Shown: positions 2,806 through 12,300 of the stretch, piece by piece | Position numbering within the stretch: position 1 is the first letter of the stretch | Layout of the letters: each line of letters starts with the position of its first letter | Origin: Pelomyxa schiedti | Lineage: Eukaryota > Protista > Evosea | Direction: 5' to 3' | Assembly: GCA_020536535.1 (NCBI GenBank) | Contig: JAHLWZ010000948.1 | Span: 1 to 39,626, forward strand | Length of the DNA: 39,626 nucleotides | The notes under the pieces: model-generated | What the model saw: only the letters and a program-made list of their open reading frames with translations | The model's database searches: none | What the model was told of the DNA's origin: nothing | Program-made: the position numbers and the translations under genes

Positions 2806-4898
2806 TCACAAGTTAAGAAGGCTAGTCATGCTGAAATCAGGTAAAAGGAAGTTTCTGGCTGCTGCCTCTGGTCTGATTGGAGGTGGGCCACCACTTGAGG
2901 ATTGGTTACGAGAGAGGTCATGCACAAGGGTGGAGTAGGTCTGTCTGAATGCGTGTATGATTACAGACAGGTGCAAAGCGGACACACGGCCGGTGCAATT
3001 TATATCGATGTCCAGGGGGTCCATGATTGTCATGGGGTGGCTTGGGGTTGTTTGGGTGGTGGGTGTGTTGGTAGTCACTGTGGTAGAAGAGGAAGTGAGT
3101 GGTTCTTCAGCACTCACTTGGCTTGGTACTCTTTCCACAGTTGTTGATGTGCCGGGTGCACTTGTCTTCTCTGTTGTAATACTAATATCAGAAGTGGGCT
3201 TAGAGAGTTTCTCCTCACAACCTCCAAGCCTGATGGATACAACATTTTTGGTGAAATCGAAGCACCATCCGTATTGGTAAAGGAAATCCAGAAGGTTACG
3301 GCCCAGTTGACAGGAATCCTCGGTTCTTGGAAGTTCATTGGTTGCACATTTAGCATTGCACTCTGCTGTGGCAAAGTCAGGTTTTACCCACTCAAAGATT
3401 CCTCCTTCTAGTGCTTTCCCTCCAGAGGTAGTAACGCCCTTAGAGTGTGCAGATTCAATCAAAGCCTTGCTTTGCAAATTCGGTAGTATTCCCCGAGTTT
3501 GAAGGAAAAAAAGTAATAGCAGACCAAGCGAATAAGATGAAAATAAACCCTTCTTGCTGTTAACGATTCCACAAGCCTTGCCCCACAGTTTTAATGCAAA
3601 TCCCAAGGTCCACACAGTCTTCTTAATGGAAAAGTAGTCCGACAGTAGTTGGGAGTTGTGTATTCCATGGTTTCGGTCCAGAACTACATCAAACGCGATA
3701 TCATCTCCCTTCATCTTGGTCTGACGAATTATTGGCACTCGAGCCTCAGCAACAACAACAGGGGATCGCGCGACTCCAATAGTCTGCAGTGCTACACAGA
3801 GGCGTTGCAACTCTTGCACCTCATTATTGGTCGTTCCATCTCTATGCACAGTGTCACTGTTTGTAAGCACGGCAACGTCCAGGTCGCTCCCAGGTGAATA
3901 TAACCCCGTTTTGAACGAGCCAAAAGGTATAGCGACAGCATTGCTCCATAGAGTGCGAGCAGCGGCCTCAATTTGGCTGCATAGCTTAATGTACGTGGCA
4001 GTAGATGCCGGAGTTGGGCCGTATTTCGTGCATAAAGATGACAGGTGGGTGGAAAAAGCTGAAAGAGCGGTTGAGTCCAAGGAAGCATGGGGAGGATGTG
4101 CCTGCGAAGAGATAGACGCCAACAGCGAAGCCTGAGAGGAATGCACTACAAACTTATGCGCATCTAGCTCCTTTTTCGGCATTATTTCTCTGCATGTGTA
4201 GCATCTCTCGTTTCCTGATCTAGTTGGCAGGAGAGGAGGGGAAAAAAAAAGGGAAAAAGGAGATACTCACTGGATTTTGCCGGCCTAACGGTAAGAGTGC
4301 AGTCATTGAACGCCAAGCTCATGTTCTTGGCCCTATACATTGTCTTCTTGTCCCGCACATACACGAACGCGTTCTTCCTCTTCACCTTGACGCAGGCGCT
4401 GCCGTCGCTCACCGTCTGCTCGCCACCCATAATCACCTTCACCTGCAGCGGCACGACCCCCCTCGCCTCGAACAACCCGCGCACGCCCTCCTCCGTCGCC
4501 TCGAGCGGCAGCCCGCCCACCCACAGGACAGGCCTCAGCTCCGCTTCCCCGCCGTCGTCCCCGTCCCCTACGCCGTCCACGTCCGCAACGCCATCGCCCT
4601 CGCCATCGCCATTGCCACCATTTGCGGTGCTGCAACTTGTTTTGGTTGCCTTGCCACTTGCGGACGCCGTTGGAGCGGGCGTGTCGAGGGGAGAGCGGCC
4701 CGGCTGCTGTGGTGCATTGGGCGAGTTGTCGAACAACTGGTTGGTGTCTGCCTGGGTGTCGACAGCAAGACCCGCAGAGCCAGTGTACGCCAGTCGCGAG
4801 GTGCCGCGCCCCCTAGCCCTCGTTGGAACCCCTCCTCTTCCCCTATCGTATCTTGTAGTATACGGCCGGTACAAGTTCCCTCGAGACCTGTTCGACAT
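2806..4898 (-). CDS. Non-canonical poly(A)/poly(U) polymerase (Cid1/TUTase family) with N-terminal RG-rich region, RRM and C2H2-type zinc finger
   Basis: Pol-beta NTase motif PFGSFKTGLYSPGSDLDV, third Asp in FDVVL, GLFSSYSLGLLLLFFLQ, and PAP-associated NRM IMDPLDIDINCTG. RRM (LWVGGLP...NAFVYV) lies in ORF 4182-4898. Intron 4270-4215 (gtgagt...atcag) joins the two ORFs in frame and creates CYTC-x11-H-x4-H. Confidence 0.88.
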
Positions 4899-5116: not shown

Positions 5117-6825
5117 ATGTTCCCGGCAATTCCATGGGAAGTTGTGGTCCTCTCTTTGTCTCTTGGTGGAACAGTCATAAAGAACAGTTTCTACAGCACT
5201 TTGTTTGGTGAATATAGGAATATCCAGGTGTACCTACCACCTGGAAGTGAATCCTACGTCGAGTCATCTCTACCACTAGCTTTATTCCTGTATGCATGCG
5301 TACTTGAGAGTTGATTGCAAATCTTGTATTTTTGGATAAAAACATTACCTCCCCAAGTCCAGGAACTGAACTGAATGAGACGGATTATCCAGAACTATTT
5401 TCCACAGTGGATGAACTCATACAGCTTGGCACTATCAATCCTATAGTGGTAGTTAAGATTGATGGCAACTGGTATCCTCCTCCAACTGTATCCTGGGATT
5501 GCACTGCAATGTAGAATTTCCCGAACTGTTATTTAAACTCACTGTGTTAAGGCCAACCTGGTATAATAATAATAGTGCAATCGGAGATTTTCACGTAATT
5601 CCTCTTAAATACTCTTTGCATAATCTAAAATGAAGAATGCAGGGCCTTATTGTGAATGAATTACTTCCCTACCTTTTCAGCAACTATCCAGCAATAGACT
5701 CATCGAGGATTGCTATCACGGGACATTCTGCAGGAGGATGGGGAGCCCTATCCCTCGGCGTTCGATTCCCAGAAGTATTCAAAGCAATAGTAGCAATGTC
5801 CCCTGTGTGGTCGCTGGCCAAGATTGCCTACGATCTCGTTGATAACCCAGCAGCATCTTGGCTCAGAGTAGTGGATTATTCTGCACTGCCGCCTTCCACA
5901 ACACAATCTCCAGAAAATGGATACTTCAGGTATGACCCATTGCGATAACTCGGCACCTAACAGGAATTTCAGTGATGTCCAGTTCAAGTTGTGCTATGCC
6001 GCTTCTCCAGCTTCTTCTTTTCACCGTATTGGAGGAGACTGGAGCGGATCCTTTTCTTTGTCAGATGTGGACAATTTTGTAGTTGGCCACCCGGTGGCCT
6101 CGTCGATTGAAAACGTTACCCTTGATGAGCAGGTAAAACCATTCGTCATGTAAATACTGAGTACGCACCAAAGGTCGTTGAGAGAATTGCCCTGCTTGAC
6201 GTAGTGAAGTGGATAAATAAAGAACAGCTTGCGCAATGGAATTCTCTGTTTTACTTTGATGTCGGAATGTTAGTTCCTAAGTCACGAGTGCCGCTAACAT
6301 TGATAGGTACGACCCTTTACTCCTTACCTCCGCAAATGAAGAGGCACACGATTTCCTCAGTCAACAGGGAATAGAGCATCACTTCGAGGTAACTTCTCGT
6401 CACTATTTTTGTTTGGAACAAAACCATTCTGTGCTCACGGCAGGTTTTCAGTTCAGGAATAGGATGCCTCAACTGCAGTGGGAATGTTAACCCCGCCACT
6501 GGGAACTGTACAGAACCCAATGTTTACATGTATGATCTGCCTCCCTTAATATGTGAATGACAGATGGCAGGTGTGGGCAACACTTTGCTGATTGGGATAA
6601 CATGAAACATGGTGCGTGTATCAGTAAGGCATATAATGGTTTGCCGTACGTTGGAGCAATCAAATCCAGGCTTCAGGTGGCCCTCCCACTCTTGAATGAG
6701 GTGTGTTTGTTTGCTCAGCATTTATCCAACTAATACCAAAAAAGGCTCTTAAGGATTCTGTGAGCACCAGTGCTGCACCCCCCACAAACTGTCCTACATT
6801 CCTCCTGGTTCTGATGATTGTGTAA
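5117..6825 (+). CDS. Alpha/beta-hydrolase putative esterase (Fes/XynC-like family), multi-exon, possible signal peptide and hydrophobic C-terminal tail
   Basis: FYSTLFGEYRNIQVYLPPG, IVNELLPYL, nucleophile elbow IAITGHSAGGWGAL, candidate catalytic His in GQHFADW, and C-terminus RLQVALPLLNEAL...FLLVLMIV*. Start and last exons are inferred. Confidence 0.75.
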
Positions 6826-7064
6826 GAGTGGTGGTCTAGGAGAGGGACGTTGTGGACTGAATAGTGTTGCTGTTCTCATATGTTTGTGTTTGCTTATATA
6901 ACAACTTTGTCTTAACTATTTACACGATACAGAGGGGGTTTATAAGGTGGGTCGGTTGGCTGGTGCCTGTTAGCTTGAACACACTCGTTCCCGTGAATGA
7001 CCATAATTAGTTGGCCAACTTGGCGCCCAATCACCGCGGCAAGATTCCCTGAATCCATCGGCCA

Positions 7065-7343
7065 TCACTCCTCACAGTTGTCTTGTAGGTATTTCTCAAA
7101 GTGTTTTGTATCCAAAATGCACCCCTTTGTGCGGCGTCACAGGAGATGGGTAAAAAAAAACAAGGTTCCCACCTTGGTCAAGGCTGAGGCACCTTCACTA
7201 TCGATTTGAGACTGCCAAAAAGATCTTGTGGAGTGGTCTGTCACTCTCAGAATGAAGTTGTGCGCGGCCGACCCTTTGCAAAACTCAATGTGAAGCGCCG
7301 ACAACTCTATCTTTACATCCGTTACGCTGGTCGTGGCTGCCAT
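7065..7343 (-). CDS. Mirror copy of the small two-exon gene in left arm
   Basis: Reverse complement of 8840-9118. Confidence 0.45.
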
Positions 7344-7387
7344 CTTATCTGTGACGTACGACGCTTTTGGGTTTAAAAGCGTTGAGA

Positions 7388-7997
7388 AACTAACTTTGGG
7401 ACTCACACTAAAAAATTCGTTTTGATGAATCAGAGTGTTGTTCTCAGTCGGGGGTGGATGGAAAAATCTGCTCTTTTGGATTTAGCTGGCCCAAAGGGTG
7501 GACCAGAAAATGTGCTTGGTCCTGCAGCAGTCTCTGTGCCCTGAAGGGAGAAAGGAATTTTTTTTGCCCAAAAGTGCCCTGGTCCAGAAAAAAAAAAATC
7601 CGGTCCGGAAAAATAATTCTTTTTTTCTGTGAAATAAACACACATGCAGCAGGCACAGAGGACATTAAATGTGCATGGCAATGCTGTTGTAGTCACCCAT
7701 AACAAGTTGTACTGAGATGGCACAGTGTCTCTCTGGAGGTGACTTGTCCTCAGTGTGACGTTGACTCAATACCTTGGTTTTAAGTCATTACTGTTGCTGG
7801 TTGTGACAATAATATTGAGTTGTCCATGTTACAACAAGCTCTGACAACCACATGCCTCACACCCTGTGACAAAACCACAGGCCACAGAAATTCACAGAAA
7901 AAAAGTATTTTTTTTACGGACCGGCTTTTTTTCCCCTGGACCAGATTTTCCTTTTTTGGACCAAAAACCCCCTAGTGTGAGTCCCAGAAGTGTAGTT
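7388..7997. mobile_element. MITE-like ~600-bp sub-element nested in left arm
   Basis: Perfect 14-bp IR TGGGACTCACACTA (7397-7410) / TAGTGTGAGTCCCA (7973-7986), extendable with two 1-nt gaps. Degenerate ~54-bp internal IR at 7580-7633 / 7891-7943. Repeated GGACC/GGTCC motifs. Confidence 0.55.
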
Positions 7998-8185
7998 GAC
8001 TACAACACCAAGTTGGTTTGGTGTGTTCTGTGAGTAATCCCGTTGAAAAAGTGGGAATAGGAAGACCACCATTAGTAAATCGAAACTTACTACTACTTAT
8101 TCTTGGGAGAGCATTCATTGGTCAATAAACAAGTCGTGATTGGTTTTACTCGACTTAGAAAATGCATTTCACAGAATTTGTAGTT

Positions 8186-8795
8186 AACTACACTTCTGGG
8201 ACTCACACTAGGGGGTTTTTGGTCCAAAAAACGAAAATCTGGTCCAGGGGAAAAAAAGCCGGTCCGTAAAAAAAATACTTTTTTTCTGTGAATTTCTGTG
8301 GCCTGTGGTTTTGTCACAGGGTGTGAGGCATGTGGTTGTCAGAGCTTGTTGTAACATGGACAACTCAATATTATTGTCACAACCAGCAACAGTAATGACT
8401 TAAAACCAAGGTATTGAGTCAACGTCACACTGAGGACAAGTCACCTCCAGAGAGACACTGTGCCATCTCAGTACAACTTGTTATGGGTGACTACAACAGC
8501 ATTGCCATGCACATTTAATGTCCTCTGTGCCTGCTGCATGTGTGTTTATTTCACAGAAAAAAAGAATTATTTTTCCGGACCGGATTTTTTTTTTTCTGGA
8601 CCAGGGCACTTTTGGGCAAAAAAAATTCCTTTCTCCCTTCAGGGCACAGAGACTGCTGCAGGACCAAGCACATTTTCTGGTCCACCCTTTGGGCCAGCTA
8701 AATCCAAAAGAGCAGATTTTTCCATCCACCCCCGACTGAGAACAACACTCTGATTCATCAAAACGAATTTTTTAGTGTGAGTCCCAAAGTTAGTT
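8186..8795. mobile_element. Mirror copy of MITE-like sub-element in right arm
   Basis: 14-bp IRs at 8197-8210 and 8773-8786. Confidence 0.55.
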
Positions 8796-8839
8796 TCTCA
8801 ACGCTTTTAAACCCAAAAGCGTCGTACGTCACAGATAAG

Positions 8840-9118
8840 ATGGCAGCCACGACCAGCGTAACGGATGTAAAGATAGAGTTGTCGGCGCTTCACATTGAGT
8901 TTTGCAAAGGGTCGGCCGCGCACAACTTCATTCTGAGAGTGACAGACCACTCCACAAGATCTTTTTGGCAGTCTCAAATCGATAGTGAAGGTGCCTCAGC
9001 CTTGACCAAGGTGGGAACCTTGTTTTTTTTTACCCATCTCCTGTGACGCCGCACAAAGGGGTGCATTTTGGATACAAAACACTTTGAGAAATACCTACAA
9101 GACAACTGTGAGGAGTGA
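8840..9118 (+). CDS. Small two-exon gene or gene fragment carried in right arm (76 aa; weak resemblance to XRCC4/SAS-6/CCDC61-type head domain)
   Basis: ATG 8840, exon 8840-9010, intron 9011-9058 (gtggga...caaag), exon 9059-9118. Product: MAATTSVTDVKIELSALHIEFCKGSAAHNFILRVTDHSTRSFWQSQIDSEGASALTKGCILDTKHFEKYLQDNCEE*. Confidence 0.45.
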
Positions 9119-9343
9119 TGGCCGATGGATTCAGGGAATCTTGCCGCGGTGATTGGGCGCCAAGTTGGCCAACTAATTATGGTCATTCACGGGAACGAGT
9201 GTGTTCAAGCTAACAGGCACCAGCCAACCGACCCACCTTATAAACCCCCTCTGTATCGTGTAAATAGTTAAGACAAAGTTGTTATATAAGCAAACACAAA
9301 CATATGAGAACAGCAACACTATTCAGTCCACAACATCCCTCTC

Positions 9344-12300
9344 CTAGACCACCACTCTTACACAATTGTCTCCCCCCCCCTCCCCCTCCCCCTCACCAAC
9401 AAAGTGATTTGTTGAACCAAGTGCAATGACAGTGGGGGCATCAGTTTGAGAAGATGGAGTTGTTTTGGAGGTTTTGGGTCTTTTTGAAGCTTTTGGCTGA
9501 GTCACCCCTGAAACAGACCTCTCCTTGTGGATGCAAGCACCAATGGCCTCACAAAGACCCACAGCTACATCTAGACAAACTTGTACATCAAGGGAAAAGT
9601 GCCACTGAAACATTGAGCTTTTTCCCTCCATCTCCTCTTGTCCATAGAGTGTTAAACAGGTTAAAAAAGTGTTTCCCCACATTTTCCAGGCGTCGGTGCG
9701 CATGACAAGGCCCTCAGACCCATCGGTCATCAGTTCTCAGAAAAAACTCCGAGCGAAATCGTGGGGTTAGTGGTAATGAAGTCCGAAAACGAACCCCCAA
9801 AGCACAGGCACAACCTTCCAATGTTCTGTGCAAATGTTTTTAAGCTCATGCGGTACCATTTTTGGGTTTTTAGAGTAAACCCAATTTTTGCCACACCTCA
9901 ACACTGTTGGGTAAGGAATGTAATTGTTGTGTAAGATTGATTCTTTCTTCTGGATCCTGCACATGAAGAACTATCATCTTCTCAATTCTTCCCATCTGTG
10001 TGCATGATACACATTTAAGTGGTAGACTTACATAAGCGGAAAGACATACTTCCTGTTGACATAGTCTCTTTGTTATAAGGTCAATTAGAGTCAATCCTTG
10101 TTCCTGGGTGCACTGGTTGTGAGGTAAGGCTCTCATGTAAATATTGTAACTCTTAAGAATAATATCTCGCAGCGAGTTCAATGCAAGCTTTTGGTTGATG
10201 TTGGGCACAGTGTGCACTAGCCGACACAACTTCTCTTAAGGAAATCAGGTGTTTTTTATAGACGAGTAACAAGTGCCTTTTACCAGTGTTTTCACATCGG
10301 TTTGGTCTTCTAAGAGTAATTTGAGACCTTAGTGAGATACATTGAAATATGTAGTTTGTACCAGGGGTACTTGGCACATTGTCTTCCACCATGCCTGCAC
10401 AATATGTGTAAAGGCAATGAAAAGTAGACAGTATTACCATAGCACAGCTGATACTTACAACCATCAATCAGAGAGTGCAAAATGGCGGAGGAACCAAAAA
10501 GGAAGAGGGTGGAAGTGGACAAAATAATAAACTGCTTGTATGTACTCTACCAAAATGGTTGGGGGGAAAAAAAAAAAACGTGTTCTACCAGTGAGTTCGT
10601 TGCTGGATGTAGAAACTTCTCTAATGTTAGATACTCTGGTTCTTTGTATAAAGGAATATCACTTATAAAAATCGCAATTACTATCAATAAAAAAGATGTG
10701 AGAATGGTAAAGGAGAATAGGGATGTGAAACCAGGCTCAGGAGTTGCACTGCAGTAGGAAAAAAACTCGAGACATAGAGCCACAGATTGACTGCATGGGA
10801 CATTACATGAGAATCTAATATTCACTTTTTTGAGGTATTTGTAAGAGAAGGGAAAGCTAAAGGTTGTTACTACTACCTGCAGAATGCAAAGGAAGTGGTA
10901 GGGGTCTTTTTAACTCTGTACCTTTATTGGCTGAGATACAAAATATCAAAGGAATACACTCACATAACAGTGCCACACTTCGAAAGTCAACGATATTGCA
11001 TAAGTCAGTGTCCCAACTGCACAAAGAAATCTTTTCAAAGGCAATAGAGTCAAGAGGCACTTCAGCTACGGATTTGTGTATCCATATGCAGTTCGGCTTT
11101 AAGTCTACATTTAACATATTTAATAGATATAGCTAGATCTGTTGCTTATAGGTAGAAGAACACCTGTATAAACTCTGTAAGGTGTTGTCTTGAGCATATC
11201 CCTCCACAGAAAAGACCAGGGTTTGGCCAACTCAGTTGCCATGCTGTAACAAAACATTGCATGCTTGAGGTTTGTCATTGCATTGAGTGGTTCCTTGAAA
11301 ATTGTGCAATAAACCTACAGAAGGCTAGAAAGTATTAAATATGTACACACAGAGCATTGCAGCAGCGAATTTGGCAAGAGGCAGCAAGTCCAAGCAAAGG
11401 GTGGTGTTGCAAGGAGACCTCCATCGACAGGAACAACAGATAGCAAGCCACACCTGTTGAGATTGCTGCCAATTGCCTTCAGCTTTTCGCAGCTGAGGGA
11501 GCCCTCTGGAAAAAACAGAGTTTTTGATGAAAACTCCCAATCGGAACTCCCCCCAAGGTGGAGAAACGCGTCAAGGTCGTGCTGCTGGGCCTTGAGGTCC
11601 TTCACATAACTGAAATGATCCCCCAAAGAAAAAGGGAAAGAAATTGTAAAAAAAAACAGAAAAAAACAAAGGGACATACTGTTGCAGTGTTTGGGTCCAG
11701 GCATTTAGCACATACTGCTGCAGTGATGGCATTATCAACCTTTGACAGGACTCCTTGACTCTACCAAAAAAAAAAAAAAAAAAAAAAAATTACATTTACT
11801 GTACAATAACAAAAGGAGGGGGCCACATACTGGGATAGAAAAGCCTCAAAACAATAAGGGAGACCCGTGAGCAAGTTTGCCACCTTGGTGCATCATAATC
11901 CCCCTATAACAATGAAAGCTAAGATGACTAACCTTCTCCATCTCCACATCAGGGTTGGAACCAAAAATTGGGGAAGACAAGCCAAAGAAATGAACAAGTG
12001 CCTTCAGAATAAGAGAAGAGTCAAGGGCAGAGCCCTATATTTTGAGAATGCAGAATTAAAGTTAAAAAAAACCTAAAATGAAATCAAATAGAAGGAGCAC
12101 AAACCAGGCATGACTTGAAGACTTTACGGGGGAGGCCTGAATGAAGCAAAACCAAGGCATCAGGCCCAGATATAAAGACTGTTGTCCTAGCAGAGGTCCG
12201 CATATGATCCAAAGTCATGAATGCAGTTTGAAATTTGCTCTTATCTTCTTCCTATCAGTAGTTTGTGTTAGTGTTGGCTGAGTGGCAAAAATGATACAAA

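What the first reader, a model, noticed from the sequence alone, without database searches (positions are those of the whole stretch)
6817..9366. 2.55-kb near-perfect palindrome wedged between two convergent genes: candidate novel foldback element
Seen: two 1189-bp arms with only three mismatches found and no indels, a 172-bp spacer, ends TGTGT...ACACA flanked by AT on both sides, and no transposase. Inference: a young non-autonomous foldback/long-TIR element of no superfamily I can assign, or an inverted duplication made by aberrant transposition of the inner element. Long palindromes are normally unstable, so it is either recent or maintained.
Basis: partly seen in the sequence, partly recalled or inferred. 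Interest (0 to 1): 0.8.

Follow-up and report, generated by a model that had tools for sequence, protein, structure and literature searches.

The report
One-off palindrome of patched-together MITEs
The 2.55-kb palindrome is in the assembly as described, but it is not a new kind of transposon. Each arm is a patchwork of three unrelated small repeats of the amoeba Pelomyxa schiedti, joined at short palindromic motifs, and it may well be a by-product of the single-cell DNA amplification used to sequence this genome.

Summary
The arms are 6817-8005 and 8178-9366, 1189 nt each, with 3 mismatches, no indels and a 172-nt spacer. No ORF in the arms hits a protein family.

The main interpretation, a new foldback or long-TIR element, fails. 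No second copy of the arm exists in the 52-Mb genome. Each arm is a mosaic:
- MITE "A": 256 bp, 4-bp target duplication, dozens of copies.
- Segment "B": 320 bp, 100% identical to contig C823.
- MITE "C": 590 bp, 5-bp target duplication, 100% identical to the copy in contig C721.

The centre is a tip-less piece of a fourth MITE, "D". The fold-back joint lies inside D's 14-nt palindromic motif. The right outer joint lies in a 6-nt palindrome (CAATTG). It can be read as a strand switch between the two ends of a plain A insertion with target duplication ATTG.

The genome is Pelomyxa schiedti: seven phi29-amplified single cells, Illumina plus Nanopore, SPAdes co-assembly. Both joints match the usual signature of amplification chimeras. 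Contigs of four libraries confirm the left joint only. They do not show the right joint or the 270 bases after it.

My odds:
- amplification or assembly chimera: about 0.5
- real recent fold-back duplication: about 0.37
- mobile composite or new family: about 0.1

Interest is low.

The parts
6817..6820 (.). ATTG: four bases outside MITE A that are still part of the inverted repeat. This equals the length of A's target-site duplication and is the putative left copy of a TSD.
   Evidence: The A family has 4-bp TSDs in 8 of 13 copies examined.
6821..7076 (+). MITE A, left copy. It is 256 bp with imperfect 14-nt TIRs (TGTAAGAGTGGTGG at the left end). It carries the family base C at 6848.
   Evidence: There are at least 25 other loci at 85-99% identity, with termini and TSDs aligned.
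7077..7396 (+). Segment B, a low-copy 320-bp stretch. It starts with GTTG and ends with AACTT next to C.
   Evidence: It is 100% identical to C823:62802-63120. Apart from the two arms and C823:62802-63120, the only relative is a 71% fragment 1.2 kb away in C823. C823 has no A in front of GTTG.
7397..7986 (+). MITE C, left copy. It is 590 bp with a perfect 14-nt TIR (TGGGACTCACACTA) and an internal 42-nt inverted repeat. Its flanks AACTT and GAAGT do not match, so it has no TSD. It has a private C at 7951.
   Evidence: Other copies have 5-bp TSDs (GAAGT in C721, AATAT in C822, AACTT in C929, AACTT/AATTT in C823).
7987..8196 (-). Piece of MITE D lacking both of its tips. It runs GAAG, a 14-mer at 7991-8004 (G variant), D interior, a 14-mer at 8179-8192 (A variant), then CTTC. 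The novel fold-back joint is at 7987-8004. The native C-to-D joint is at 8179-8196.
   Evidence: Positions 7991-8787 are 100% identical to C721, where D is complete with tips GGGACGGCCAAT and C sits in it with TSD GAAGT. The 29-mer across the fold joint is unique in the genome.
8197..8786 (-). MITE C, right copy. It is identical to the C721 copy over its whole length.
8787..9106 (-). Segment B, right copy. It is identical to the left copy and to C823.
9107..9362 (-). MITE A, right copy. It has a private CpG C-to-T change, read on A's strand, at 9335.
9363..9368 (.). CAATTG, a 6-nt palindrome at the right outer joint. Bases 9363-9366 end the inverted repeat. Bases 9365-9368 (ATTG) can be read as the right copy of a 4-bp TSD, preceded by CA, the last two bases of an A right end.
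   Evidence: This is read directly from the sequence. The TSD reading is an inference: given CAAT, TG follows by chance 1 time in 16.
9367..9814 (.). Right flank. It holds a 43-nt C-rich unique stretch, a 180-nt fragment (9410-9589) of a longer repeat, and a second repeat (9642-9814). None of 9384-9524 appears in the contigs of four libraries.

Best explanation
The palindrome is a single-copy chain of ordinary repeats (A, B, C, a piece of D, then C, B, A reversed). It is held together by two strand-switch joints, each in a short palindromic motif. Most likely it does not exist in this form in the amoeba.

Shown:
- The DNA came from seven phi29-amplified single cells, co-assembled with Nanopore reads.
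- The parts between the joints are 100% identical to stretches of other contigs.

Inferred:
- In one amplification reaction a growing strand folded back at D's 14-nt motif pair, which lie 202 nt apart.
- A second switch joined the two ends of a plain MITE A insertion. That insertion has target duplication ATTG, the overlap is ATTGTG, and the ends lie 260 nt apart.
- The assembler threaded a path from the left flank to the right flank through these two flips and through the collapsed repeats A and C.

The true locus would then be simpler, possibly just one MITE A in an intergenic repeat patch.
For: 1. The assembly matches Pelomyxa schiedti (52.4 Mb, 5337 scaffolds). It was made with GenomiPhi MDA of single cells, Illumina plus Nanopore, and SPAdes --sc co-assembly.
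2. Inverted chimeras are the commonest MDA artefact. Overlaps are mostly 5-8 nt, hot spots are at 12-13 nt, and distances peak at about 80 and 250-300 nt. The centre joint has a 14-nt overlap at 202 nt. The right joint has a 6-nt overlap at 260 nt.
3. Everything between the joints equals other contigs: B matches C823 at 100%, and C plus D matches C721 at 100% over 797 nt. C has mismatched flanks, so it was not inserted here.
4. Contigs of four libraries bridge the left joint in three of them. No contig reaches past 9383, although X1 and X3 cover 9770 onward at 14x and 52x. The left-flank unitig ends at 6847 in X1 and X2, which implies the right-joint word is absent there. X1's B unitig runs past B into letters that are not A. 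B is absent in X3 and X4.
5. The two private base changes both sit on the side of the two novel joints.
6. Another follow-up in this genome also suspected an amplification artefact, for a 449-nt in-place inversion (not checked by me).
Against: The A-to-B joint is a clean transposon-end joint found only here. Something real must therefore carry A next to B, and the expected other side of such an insertion in C823 is not in the assembly.

SPAdes normally needs read-pair or long-read support at every repeat exit. Physical molecules with this order must therefore have existed, and that needs several switches in one amplified molecule.

The arms differ at two positions unseen in any other copy examined, whereas a pure fold-back copy should be identical.

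No other inverted repeat of 100 nt or more above 95% identity was found in the rest of the window or in 104 kb of other loci; the only hit there was a 186-nt pair at 94% identity in L008. Such artefacts are therefore not rampant.

The tool warns that holes in contig coverage prove nothing, and I laid contigs at 97% likeness.
Confidence: 0.5

Rival explanations
1. The palindrome is real and young. A break at or near a resident MITE A (target duplication ATTG) was repaired by DNA synthesis that wandered between dispersed repeat copies. It first used an A copy lying next to B in a C823-like site. It then used the C copy of C721, folded back at D's 14-nt motif and copied itself back. It rejoined at 4-6 nt of microhomology (CACAAT / CAATTG) at A's old right junction. 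This would be break-induced or microhomology-mediated replication with template switches. It has no function of its own, though it could give hairpin RNA if transcribed.
For: - The contig runs through with unique flanks and no Ns.
- The outer ends fall at A's tip plus exactly 4 nt on both sides, and ATTG recurs at 9365-9368.
- The A-to-B joint looks like a normal A insertion at the GTTG that starts B in C823.
- Each arm has one private change, one of them a CpG transition.
- The assembler needed physical support for each step.
- In X2 the B unitig breaks exactly at 7077, so an A-to-B context exists in at least one cell.
- Short inverted repeats are known to seed inverted duplications in vivo (PMC10766183 and PMC4689423, titles and abstracts seen).
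Against: - The right joint and the following 270 bases are missing from the contigs of all four libraries, although both sides are covered in X1 and X3.
- There is no A-to-B branch in X1, and no B in X3 or X4.
- It needs about five template switches among three loci, all so recent that the pieces are still 100% identical to their sources.
- A palindrome with 1.2-kb arms and a 172-nt loop should be unstable.
Confidence: 0.37
2. The whole 2.55-kb unit formed elsewhere and was then moved here as a composite transposon. MITE A's transposase would have used the two outward-facing A left ends, making the 4-bp duplication ATTG.
For: - Both outer termini are A left ends.
- The A family makes 4-bp TSDs.
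- ATTG lies at 6817-6820 and again at 9365-9368.
Against: - The right ATTG is offset by two extra bases (CA).
- There is no second copy and no donor site in the genome.
- No transposase for A has been identified.
- The read evidence against the right joint applies here too.
Confidence: 0.07
3. One reading: this is a member of a new family of foldback or long-TIR non-autonomous transposons.
For: It has long near-identical inverted arms, no coding capacity and short flanking repeats (AT, TG or ATTG, depending on the parse).
Against: - No other copy shares the arm.
- The arm splits into three families or segments that occur separately at many loci.
- The centre is a truncated fourth element.
- The internal MITE C lacks its own TSD.
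Confidence: 0.02

Closest known systems
Inverted chimeras of phi29 multiple displacement amplification (review PMC9984789)
   Same: Two segments on opposite strands a few hundred nt apart are joined through a short overlap. Here the overlaps are 14 nt at 202 nt and 6 nt at 260 nt. The DNA was amplified by this method.
   Different: A single chimera returns to the same flank. Here two flips plus passages through dispersed repeats are needed to reach a different right flank. The arms also differ at two bases.
Fold-back inverted duplication seeded by short inverted repeats in vivo (for example the ODIRA model in yeast, PMC10766183 and PMC4689423; I read only their titles and abstracts)
   Same: The novel joint lies inside a short interrupted inverted repeat, the copies are head to head, and the arms are nearly identical.
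   Different: Going by those abstracts, ODIRA gives interstitial inverted triplications of local sequence (PMC4689423). Here there are two copies of a mosaic whose pieces match three different loci, and the outer ends are transposon ends.
Foldback (FB-type) transposons (from my own knowledge of Drosophila FB elements)
   Same: Long inverted arms, little or no coding capacity and a short central spacer.
   Different: FB families are multi-copy, with arms built from their own subterminal tandem repeats. Here there is one copy, and the arms are built from unrelated MITEs.
Nests of MITEs in intergenic DNA
   Same: A, C and D each have TIRs, fixed-length target duplications and many dispersed copies. 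C sits inside D in contig C721, as in ordinary nested insertion.
   Different: In the window the junctions B/C/D and D/C' are not insertion junctions: there are no TSDs and D has lost its tips.

Membership tests
Foldback / long-TIR transposon family | Several genomic copies share both arms and termini in different flanks. | tested here: not met
   One search finds only the two arms themselves matching full length. The fold-joint 29-mer is unique, and B occurs otherwise only in C823.
Foldback / long-TIR transposon family | The arms are the element's own terminal sequence, not a string of unrelated elements. | tested here: not met
   Searches show that the arm is MITE A, then segment B, then MITE C. 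Each is found separately elsewhere with its own ends.
Foldback / long-TIR transposon family | A target-site duplication flanks the whole unit. | tested here: inconclusive
   Three parses are possible: AT/AT (palindromic, part of the repeat), TG/TG, or ATTG/ATTG with a 2-nt offset. No empty site was found.
MITE family A (256 bp) | Terminal inverted repeats, a fixed-length TSD and many dispersed copies. | tested here: met
   Searches show 14-nt imperfect TIRs, perfect 4-bp TSDs in 8 of 13 copies, and at least 25 loci. The window copies are flanked by ATTG and GTTG (3 of 4 bases match).
MITE family C (590 bp) | Terminal inverted repeats and a 5-bp TSD. | tested here: met
   One search shows a 14-nt perfect TIR and TSDs in C721, C822 and C929 (4 of 5 bases in C823). 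The two window copies themselves have AACTT on one side and GAAGT on the other, so they were not inserted where they lie.
MDA inverted chimera | The template DNA was amplified by phi29 strand displacement. | tested here: met
   (PMC8887013 methods).
MDA inverted chimera | The joint links opposite strands less than a few hundred nt apart through a 5-14 nt overlap. | tested here: met
   For the centre, against the figures. For the right joint this holds only under the inferred plain-insertion reading.
MDA inverted chimera | The joint is present in one amplification reaction only and absent from unamplified DNA. | not testable with these tools
   Only assembled contigs of four runs could be laid, once. 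They lack the right joint but cannot show which library holds it.
In-vivo short-inverted-repeat fold-back duplication | The joint lies within a short interrupted inverted repeat. | tested here: met
In-vivo short-inverted-repeat fold-back duplication | The structure is present in independent cells or in unamplified DNA. | tested here: inconclusive
   The left joint is in three libraries. An A-to-B context is inferred in one (X2). The right joint is in none of four.

The most novel reading that the evidence does not exclude
The palindrome is real and is transcribed by read-through from a neighbouring gene. It would then fold into a 1.2-kb hairpin RNA that feeds small RNAs against the still-young MITE families A and C. 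That would make it a self-made transposon silencer, comparable to maize Mu killer (from memory). Another follow-up of this scan (not checked by me) reports an RNA-dependent RNA polymerase gene in this genome.
Probability: 0.07. Interest if true: 0.55.

Novelty: not a real feature. Interest (0 to 1): 0.15.

Why it matters
If it is an artefact, it is a useful warning. This much-used single-cell assembly of Pelomyxa schiedti can contain internal chimeric paths with two joints. These paths look like exotic mobile elements, and short palindromic motifs in MITEs are where they arise. Other 'foldback', 'inverted exon' and 'in-place inversion' findings in this genome should be checked against per-library reads.

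If it is real, it is a clean natural example of repair synthesis hopping between dispersed MITE copies and folding back at a 14-nt motif. That is known in principle, so it would be of modest interest.

Either way, three MITE families (A, C, D) with defined ends and target duplications are described for an organism whose transposons are uncharted.

Tried and rejected
- **Second copies or an empty site.** The whole arm, both flanks, the fold-joint 29-mer and a predicted 'C823 flank + GTTG + A' junction were searched in the genome. There is no second copy, no empty site and no alternative haplotig.
- **Census of long palindromes.** I scanned 104 kb of loci already held instead.
- **Junction-spanning ORFs in other public assemblies.** Nothing is on record.
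- **Rfam.** The one hit (MIR4208, 61 bits against a gathering score of 140) covers the central hairpin. I take it for chance.
- **Coding capacity.** The longest arm ORFs have no Pfam hit.
- **Contig C1571 as a test of misjoins at A copies.** Its A copy shares a left flank with C247 but has another right flank. Its flank turned out to be a multi-copy segment, so it is uninformative.
- **The other first-stage note on this stretch (s1-595731).** It says that removing the palindrome restores a 38-nt intron. GT...AG ends do exist on the minus strand. But the supposed upstream exon lies in repeat fragments and the downstream one would add five codons, so I cannot tell.
- **Depth ratios from the laid contigs.** I rejected these as a copy-number measure, because amplification bias is too strong.
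Full report
**1. Observation**

The inverted repeat is exactly as reported. The arms are 6817-8005 and 8178-9366, 1189 nt each, with three mismatches, no indels and a 172-nt spacer. Complementarity stops sharply at both edges. It is the only inverted repeat of 60 nt or more in the window. ORFs inside are short, and the two longest have no Pfam match. The left neighbour is an esterase D-like gene on the + strand. The right side is more repeat fragments, and a convergent gene there is not verified.

**2. What the arm is made of**

I searched the arm against the window's own genome, which has 52.4 Mb in 5337 contigs. No second full-length copy turned up. Three classes of partial hits did. Alignment of copies with their flanks gives these parts.

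- **MITE A, 6821-7076.**
  - It is 256 bp with imperfect 14-nt TIRs.
  - There are at least 25 copies at 85-99% identity.
  - Perfect 4-bp target duplications flank 8 of 13 copies.
- **Segment B, 7077-7396.**
  - It is 100% identical to C823:62802-63120.
  - It is otherwise found only as a 71% fragment nearby in C823.
  - In C823 no A precedes it, but B starts with GTTG. The A/B joint therefore looks like a normal A insertion at GTTG.
- **MITE C, 7397-7986.**
  - It is 590 bp with a perfect 14-nt TIR.
  - It has 5-bp target duplications in C721, C822 and C929, and 4 of 5 bases in C823.
  - In the window C is flanked by AACTT, as in C823, on one side and by GAAGT, as in C721, on the other. This copy was therefore not inserted where it lies.
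  - Both window copies are identical over their length to the C721 copy. The C823 copy differs by a 7-bp and a 3-bp deletion.

**3. The centre**

Window 7991-8787 covers the spacer plus the right copy of C. It is 100% identical to C721. There the 'spacer' is the inside of a fourth small element, D, of about 240 bp. D has tips GGGACGGCCAAT and a subterminal 14-nt palindromic motif at each end. Further copies lie in C590, C1090 and C669, and in C721 C is inserted in D with a perfect GAAGT duplication.

In the window D has lost both tips. After the second 14-mer the sequence continues with the reverse complement of what precedes the first 14-mer. So the right arm plus the spacer is the native order. 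The left side of the spacer (7987-8004) is a novel fold-back joint inside the 14-mer pair, whose members lie 202 nt apart. The 29-mer across it is unique in the genome. The mismatch 7998/8185 is just the native difference between D's two 14-mers.

**4. The outer ends**

The repeat extends exactly 4 nt (ATTG) beyond A's left tip on both sides, which is the length of A's target duplication. At the right joint the sequence reads A-tip, CA, ATTG, then the flank. That forms the palindrome CAATTG (9363-9368).

One reading is that the locus once held, or still holds, a plain A insertion with duplication ATTG. The right joint would then be a strand switch from A's right junction to its left junction, through the shared ATTGTG, 260 nt away. 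This is an inference. Given CAAT, the chance that TG follows is 1 in 16.

**5. Where the DNA came from**

The genome paper gives the same size and scaffold number. It describes GenomiPhi (phi29) amplification of single cells, seven Illumina libraries, and Nanopore sequencing of debranched amplified DNA. It also describes SPAdes --sc co-assembly.

A review of amplification chimeras says the following:
- Inverted chimeras are the most common type.
- Overlaps are mostly 5-8 nt, with hot spots at 12-13 nt.
- The preferred distances are about 80 and 250-300 nt.
- Each chimera is particular to one reaction.

Both novel joints here fit these figures. In-vivo template switching would look the same.

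**6. Reads**

Only assembled contigs of four runs of one sample could be laid, and only once.

- The left joint is bridged in three runs: X1 and X2 to 6847, X3 to 6846.
- I checked on the B unitig that these contigs end at the last copy-specific 31-mer. That unitig ends at 7421, as expected from the AACTT flank it shares with C929.
- By the same rule, an end at 6847 means that the word ATTG plus A had a single predecessor in X1 and X2. The right joint is therefore not in those runs.
- No contig reaches past 9383, and depth over 9384-9524 is zero in all four runs. Yet X1 and X3 cover 9770 onward at 14x and 52x.
- X1's B unitig continues 25 nt past B into letters that are not A. This fits the C823 context and shows no branch.
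- X2's B unitig stops exactly at 7077, so there is a branch and an A/B context exists there.
- X3 and X4 have the left flank but no B.

The tool warns that holes prove nothing. I also used 97% likeness, so a diverged allele would be missed. Even so, the palindrome-specific joints other than the left one have no positive support in these four libraries.

**7. Weighing**

For an artefact:
- the origin of the data;
- the two canonical joints;
- the 100% identity of everything between them to other contigs, which is expected if they are the same graph edges;
- the mismatched flanks of C;
- the read evidence;
- the fact that the two private base changes (7951 and 9335, unseen in any other copy) both lie on the side of a novel joint, as low-coverage junction reads would give.

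For a real structure:
- the assembler needs physical support at each repeat exit;
- the A/B joint is a true transposon-end joint found only here;
- the arms are not identical;
- long palindromes are not common in the assembly.

I put an amplification or assembly chimera at about 0.5. I put a real, very recent repair-synthesis product (break at A, template switches through an A copy beside B and the C copy of C721, fold-back at D, rejoining at microhomology) at about 0.37. A composite moved by A's transposase gets about 0.07, and a new foldback family about 0.02.

**8. Comparison and novelty**

The structure fails the defining tests of a foldback transposon family. It has no further copies, and its arms are made of unrelated elements. 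It works like, and may simply be, an inverted chimera.

If real, it belongs with short-inverted-repeat-seeded fold-back duplications and with nested MITE patches, which are both known kinds.

The only genuinely new material is the description of MITE families A, C and D in an organism without a transposon catalogue.

Another first-stage note covers this same stretch, seen in another window (s1-595731). This scan has also noted other foldback-like structures elsewhere in the same genome.

**9. What would settle it**

Per-library read mapping to the five junctions, and PCR or long reads on unamplified DNA, as set out under the next steps.

Noticed in passing
window 9410-9589; L025 (C1813) 1203-1667: The 180-nt repeat right of the palindrome is a fragment of a longer multi-copy unit. 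The other copies share both flanks, and in them it lies inside a 154-aa minus-strand ORF of unknown nature. The window copy is 93-96% alike, without indels, and cut at both ends.
   Followed up: partly
window 9371-9396: This is a C-rich tract, with runs of 9, 5 and 5 C, directly after the palindrome. It is G-quadruplex-like on the minus strand. It might contribute to the coverage hole seen in all four libraries.
   Followed up: no
L004 / L028 (C721:114470-115300): This is a clean nested insertion. MITE C sits inside MITE D with a perfect 5-bp duplication (GAAGT), and D lies in an AT-rich stretch. The TIRs of C and D both start TGGGAC, so they may belong to one superfamily.
   Followed up: partly
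L014 (C1571:1674-1933) versus L017 (C247): Two contigs share the same left flank and the same MITE A copy but differ on the right. Only C247 has the proper AATC duplication. The flank is itself a segment present at least three times, so this is either a paralogue or a misjoin at the repeat.
   Followed up: partly
window 2806-4898 (-): An intron-poor Cid1/PAP-type nucleotidyltransferase ORF (458 aa) is directly preceded by a 238-aa ORF with a weak RRM hit. The two may be one gene.
   Followed up: no
window 7928-8254 (-): The central hairpin gives a sub-threshold Rfam match to a plant microRNA precursor family (MIR4208, 61 bits against 140). I take this for a chance effect of the hairpin shape.
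   Followed up: yes
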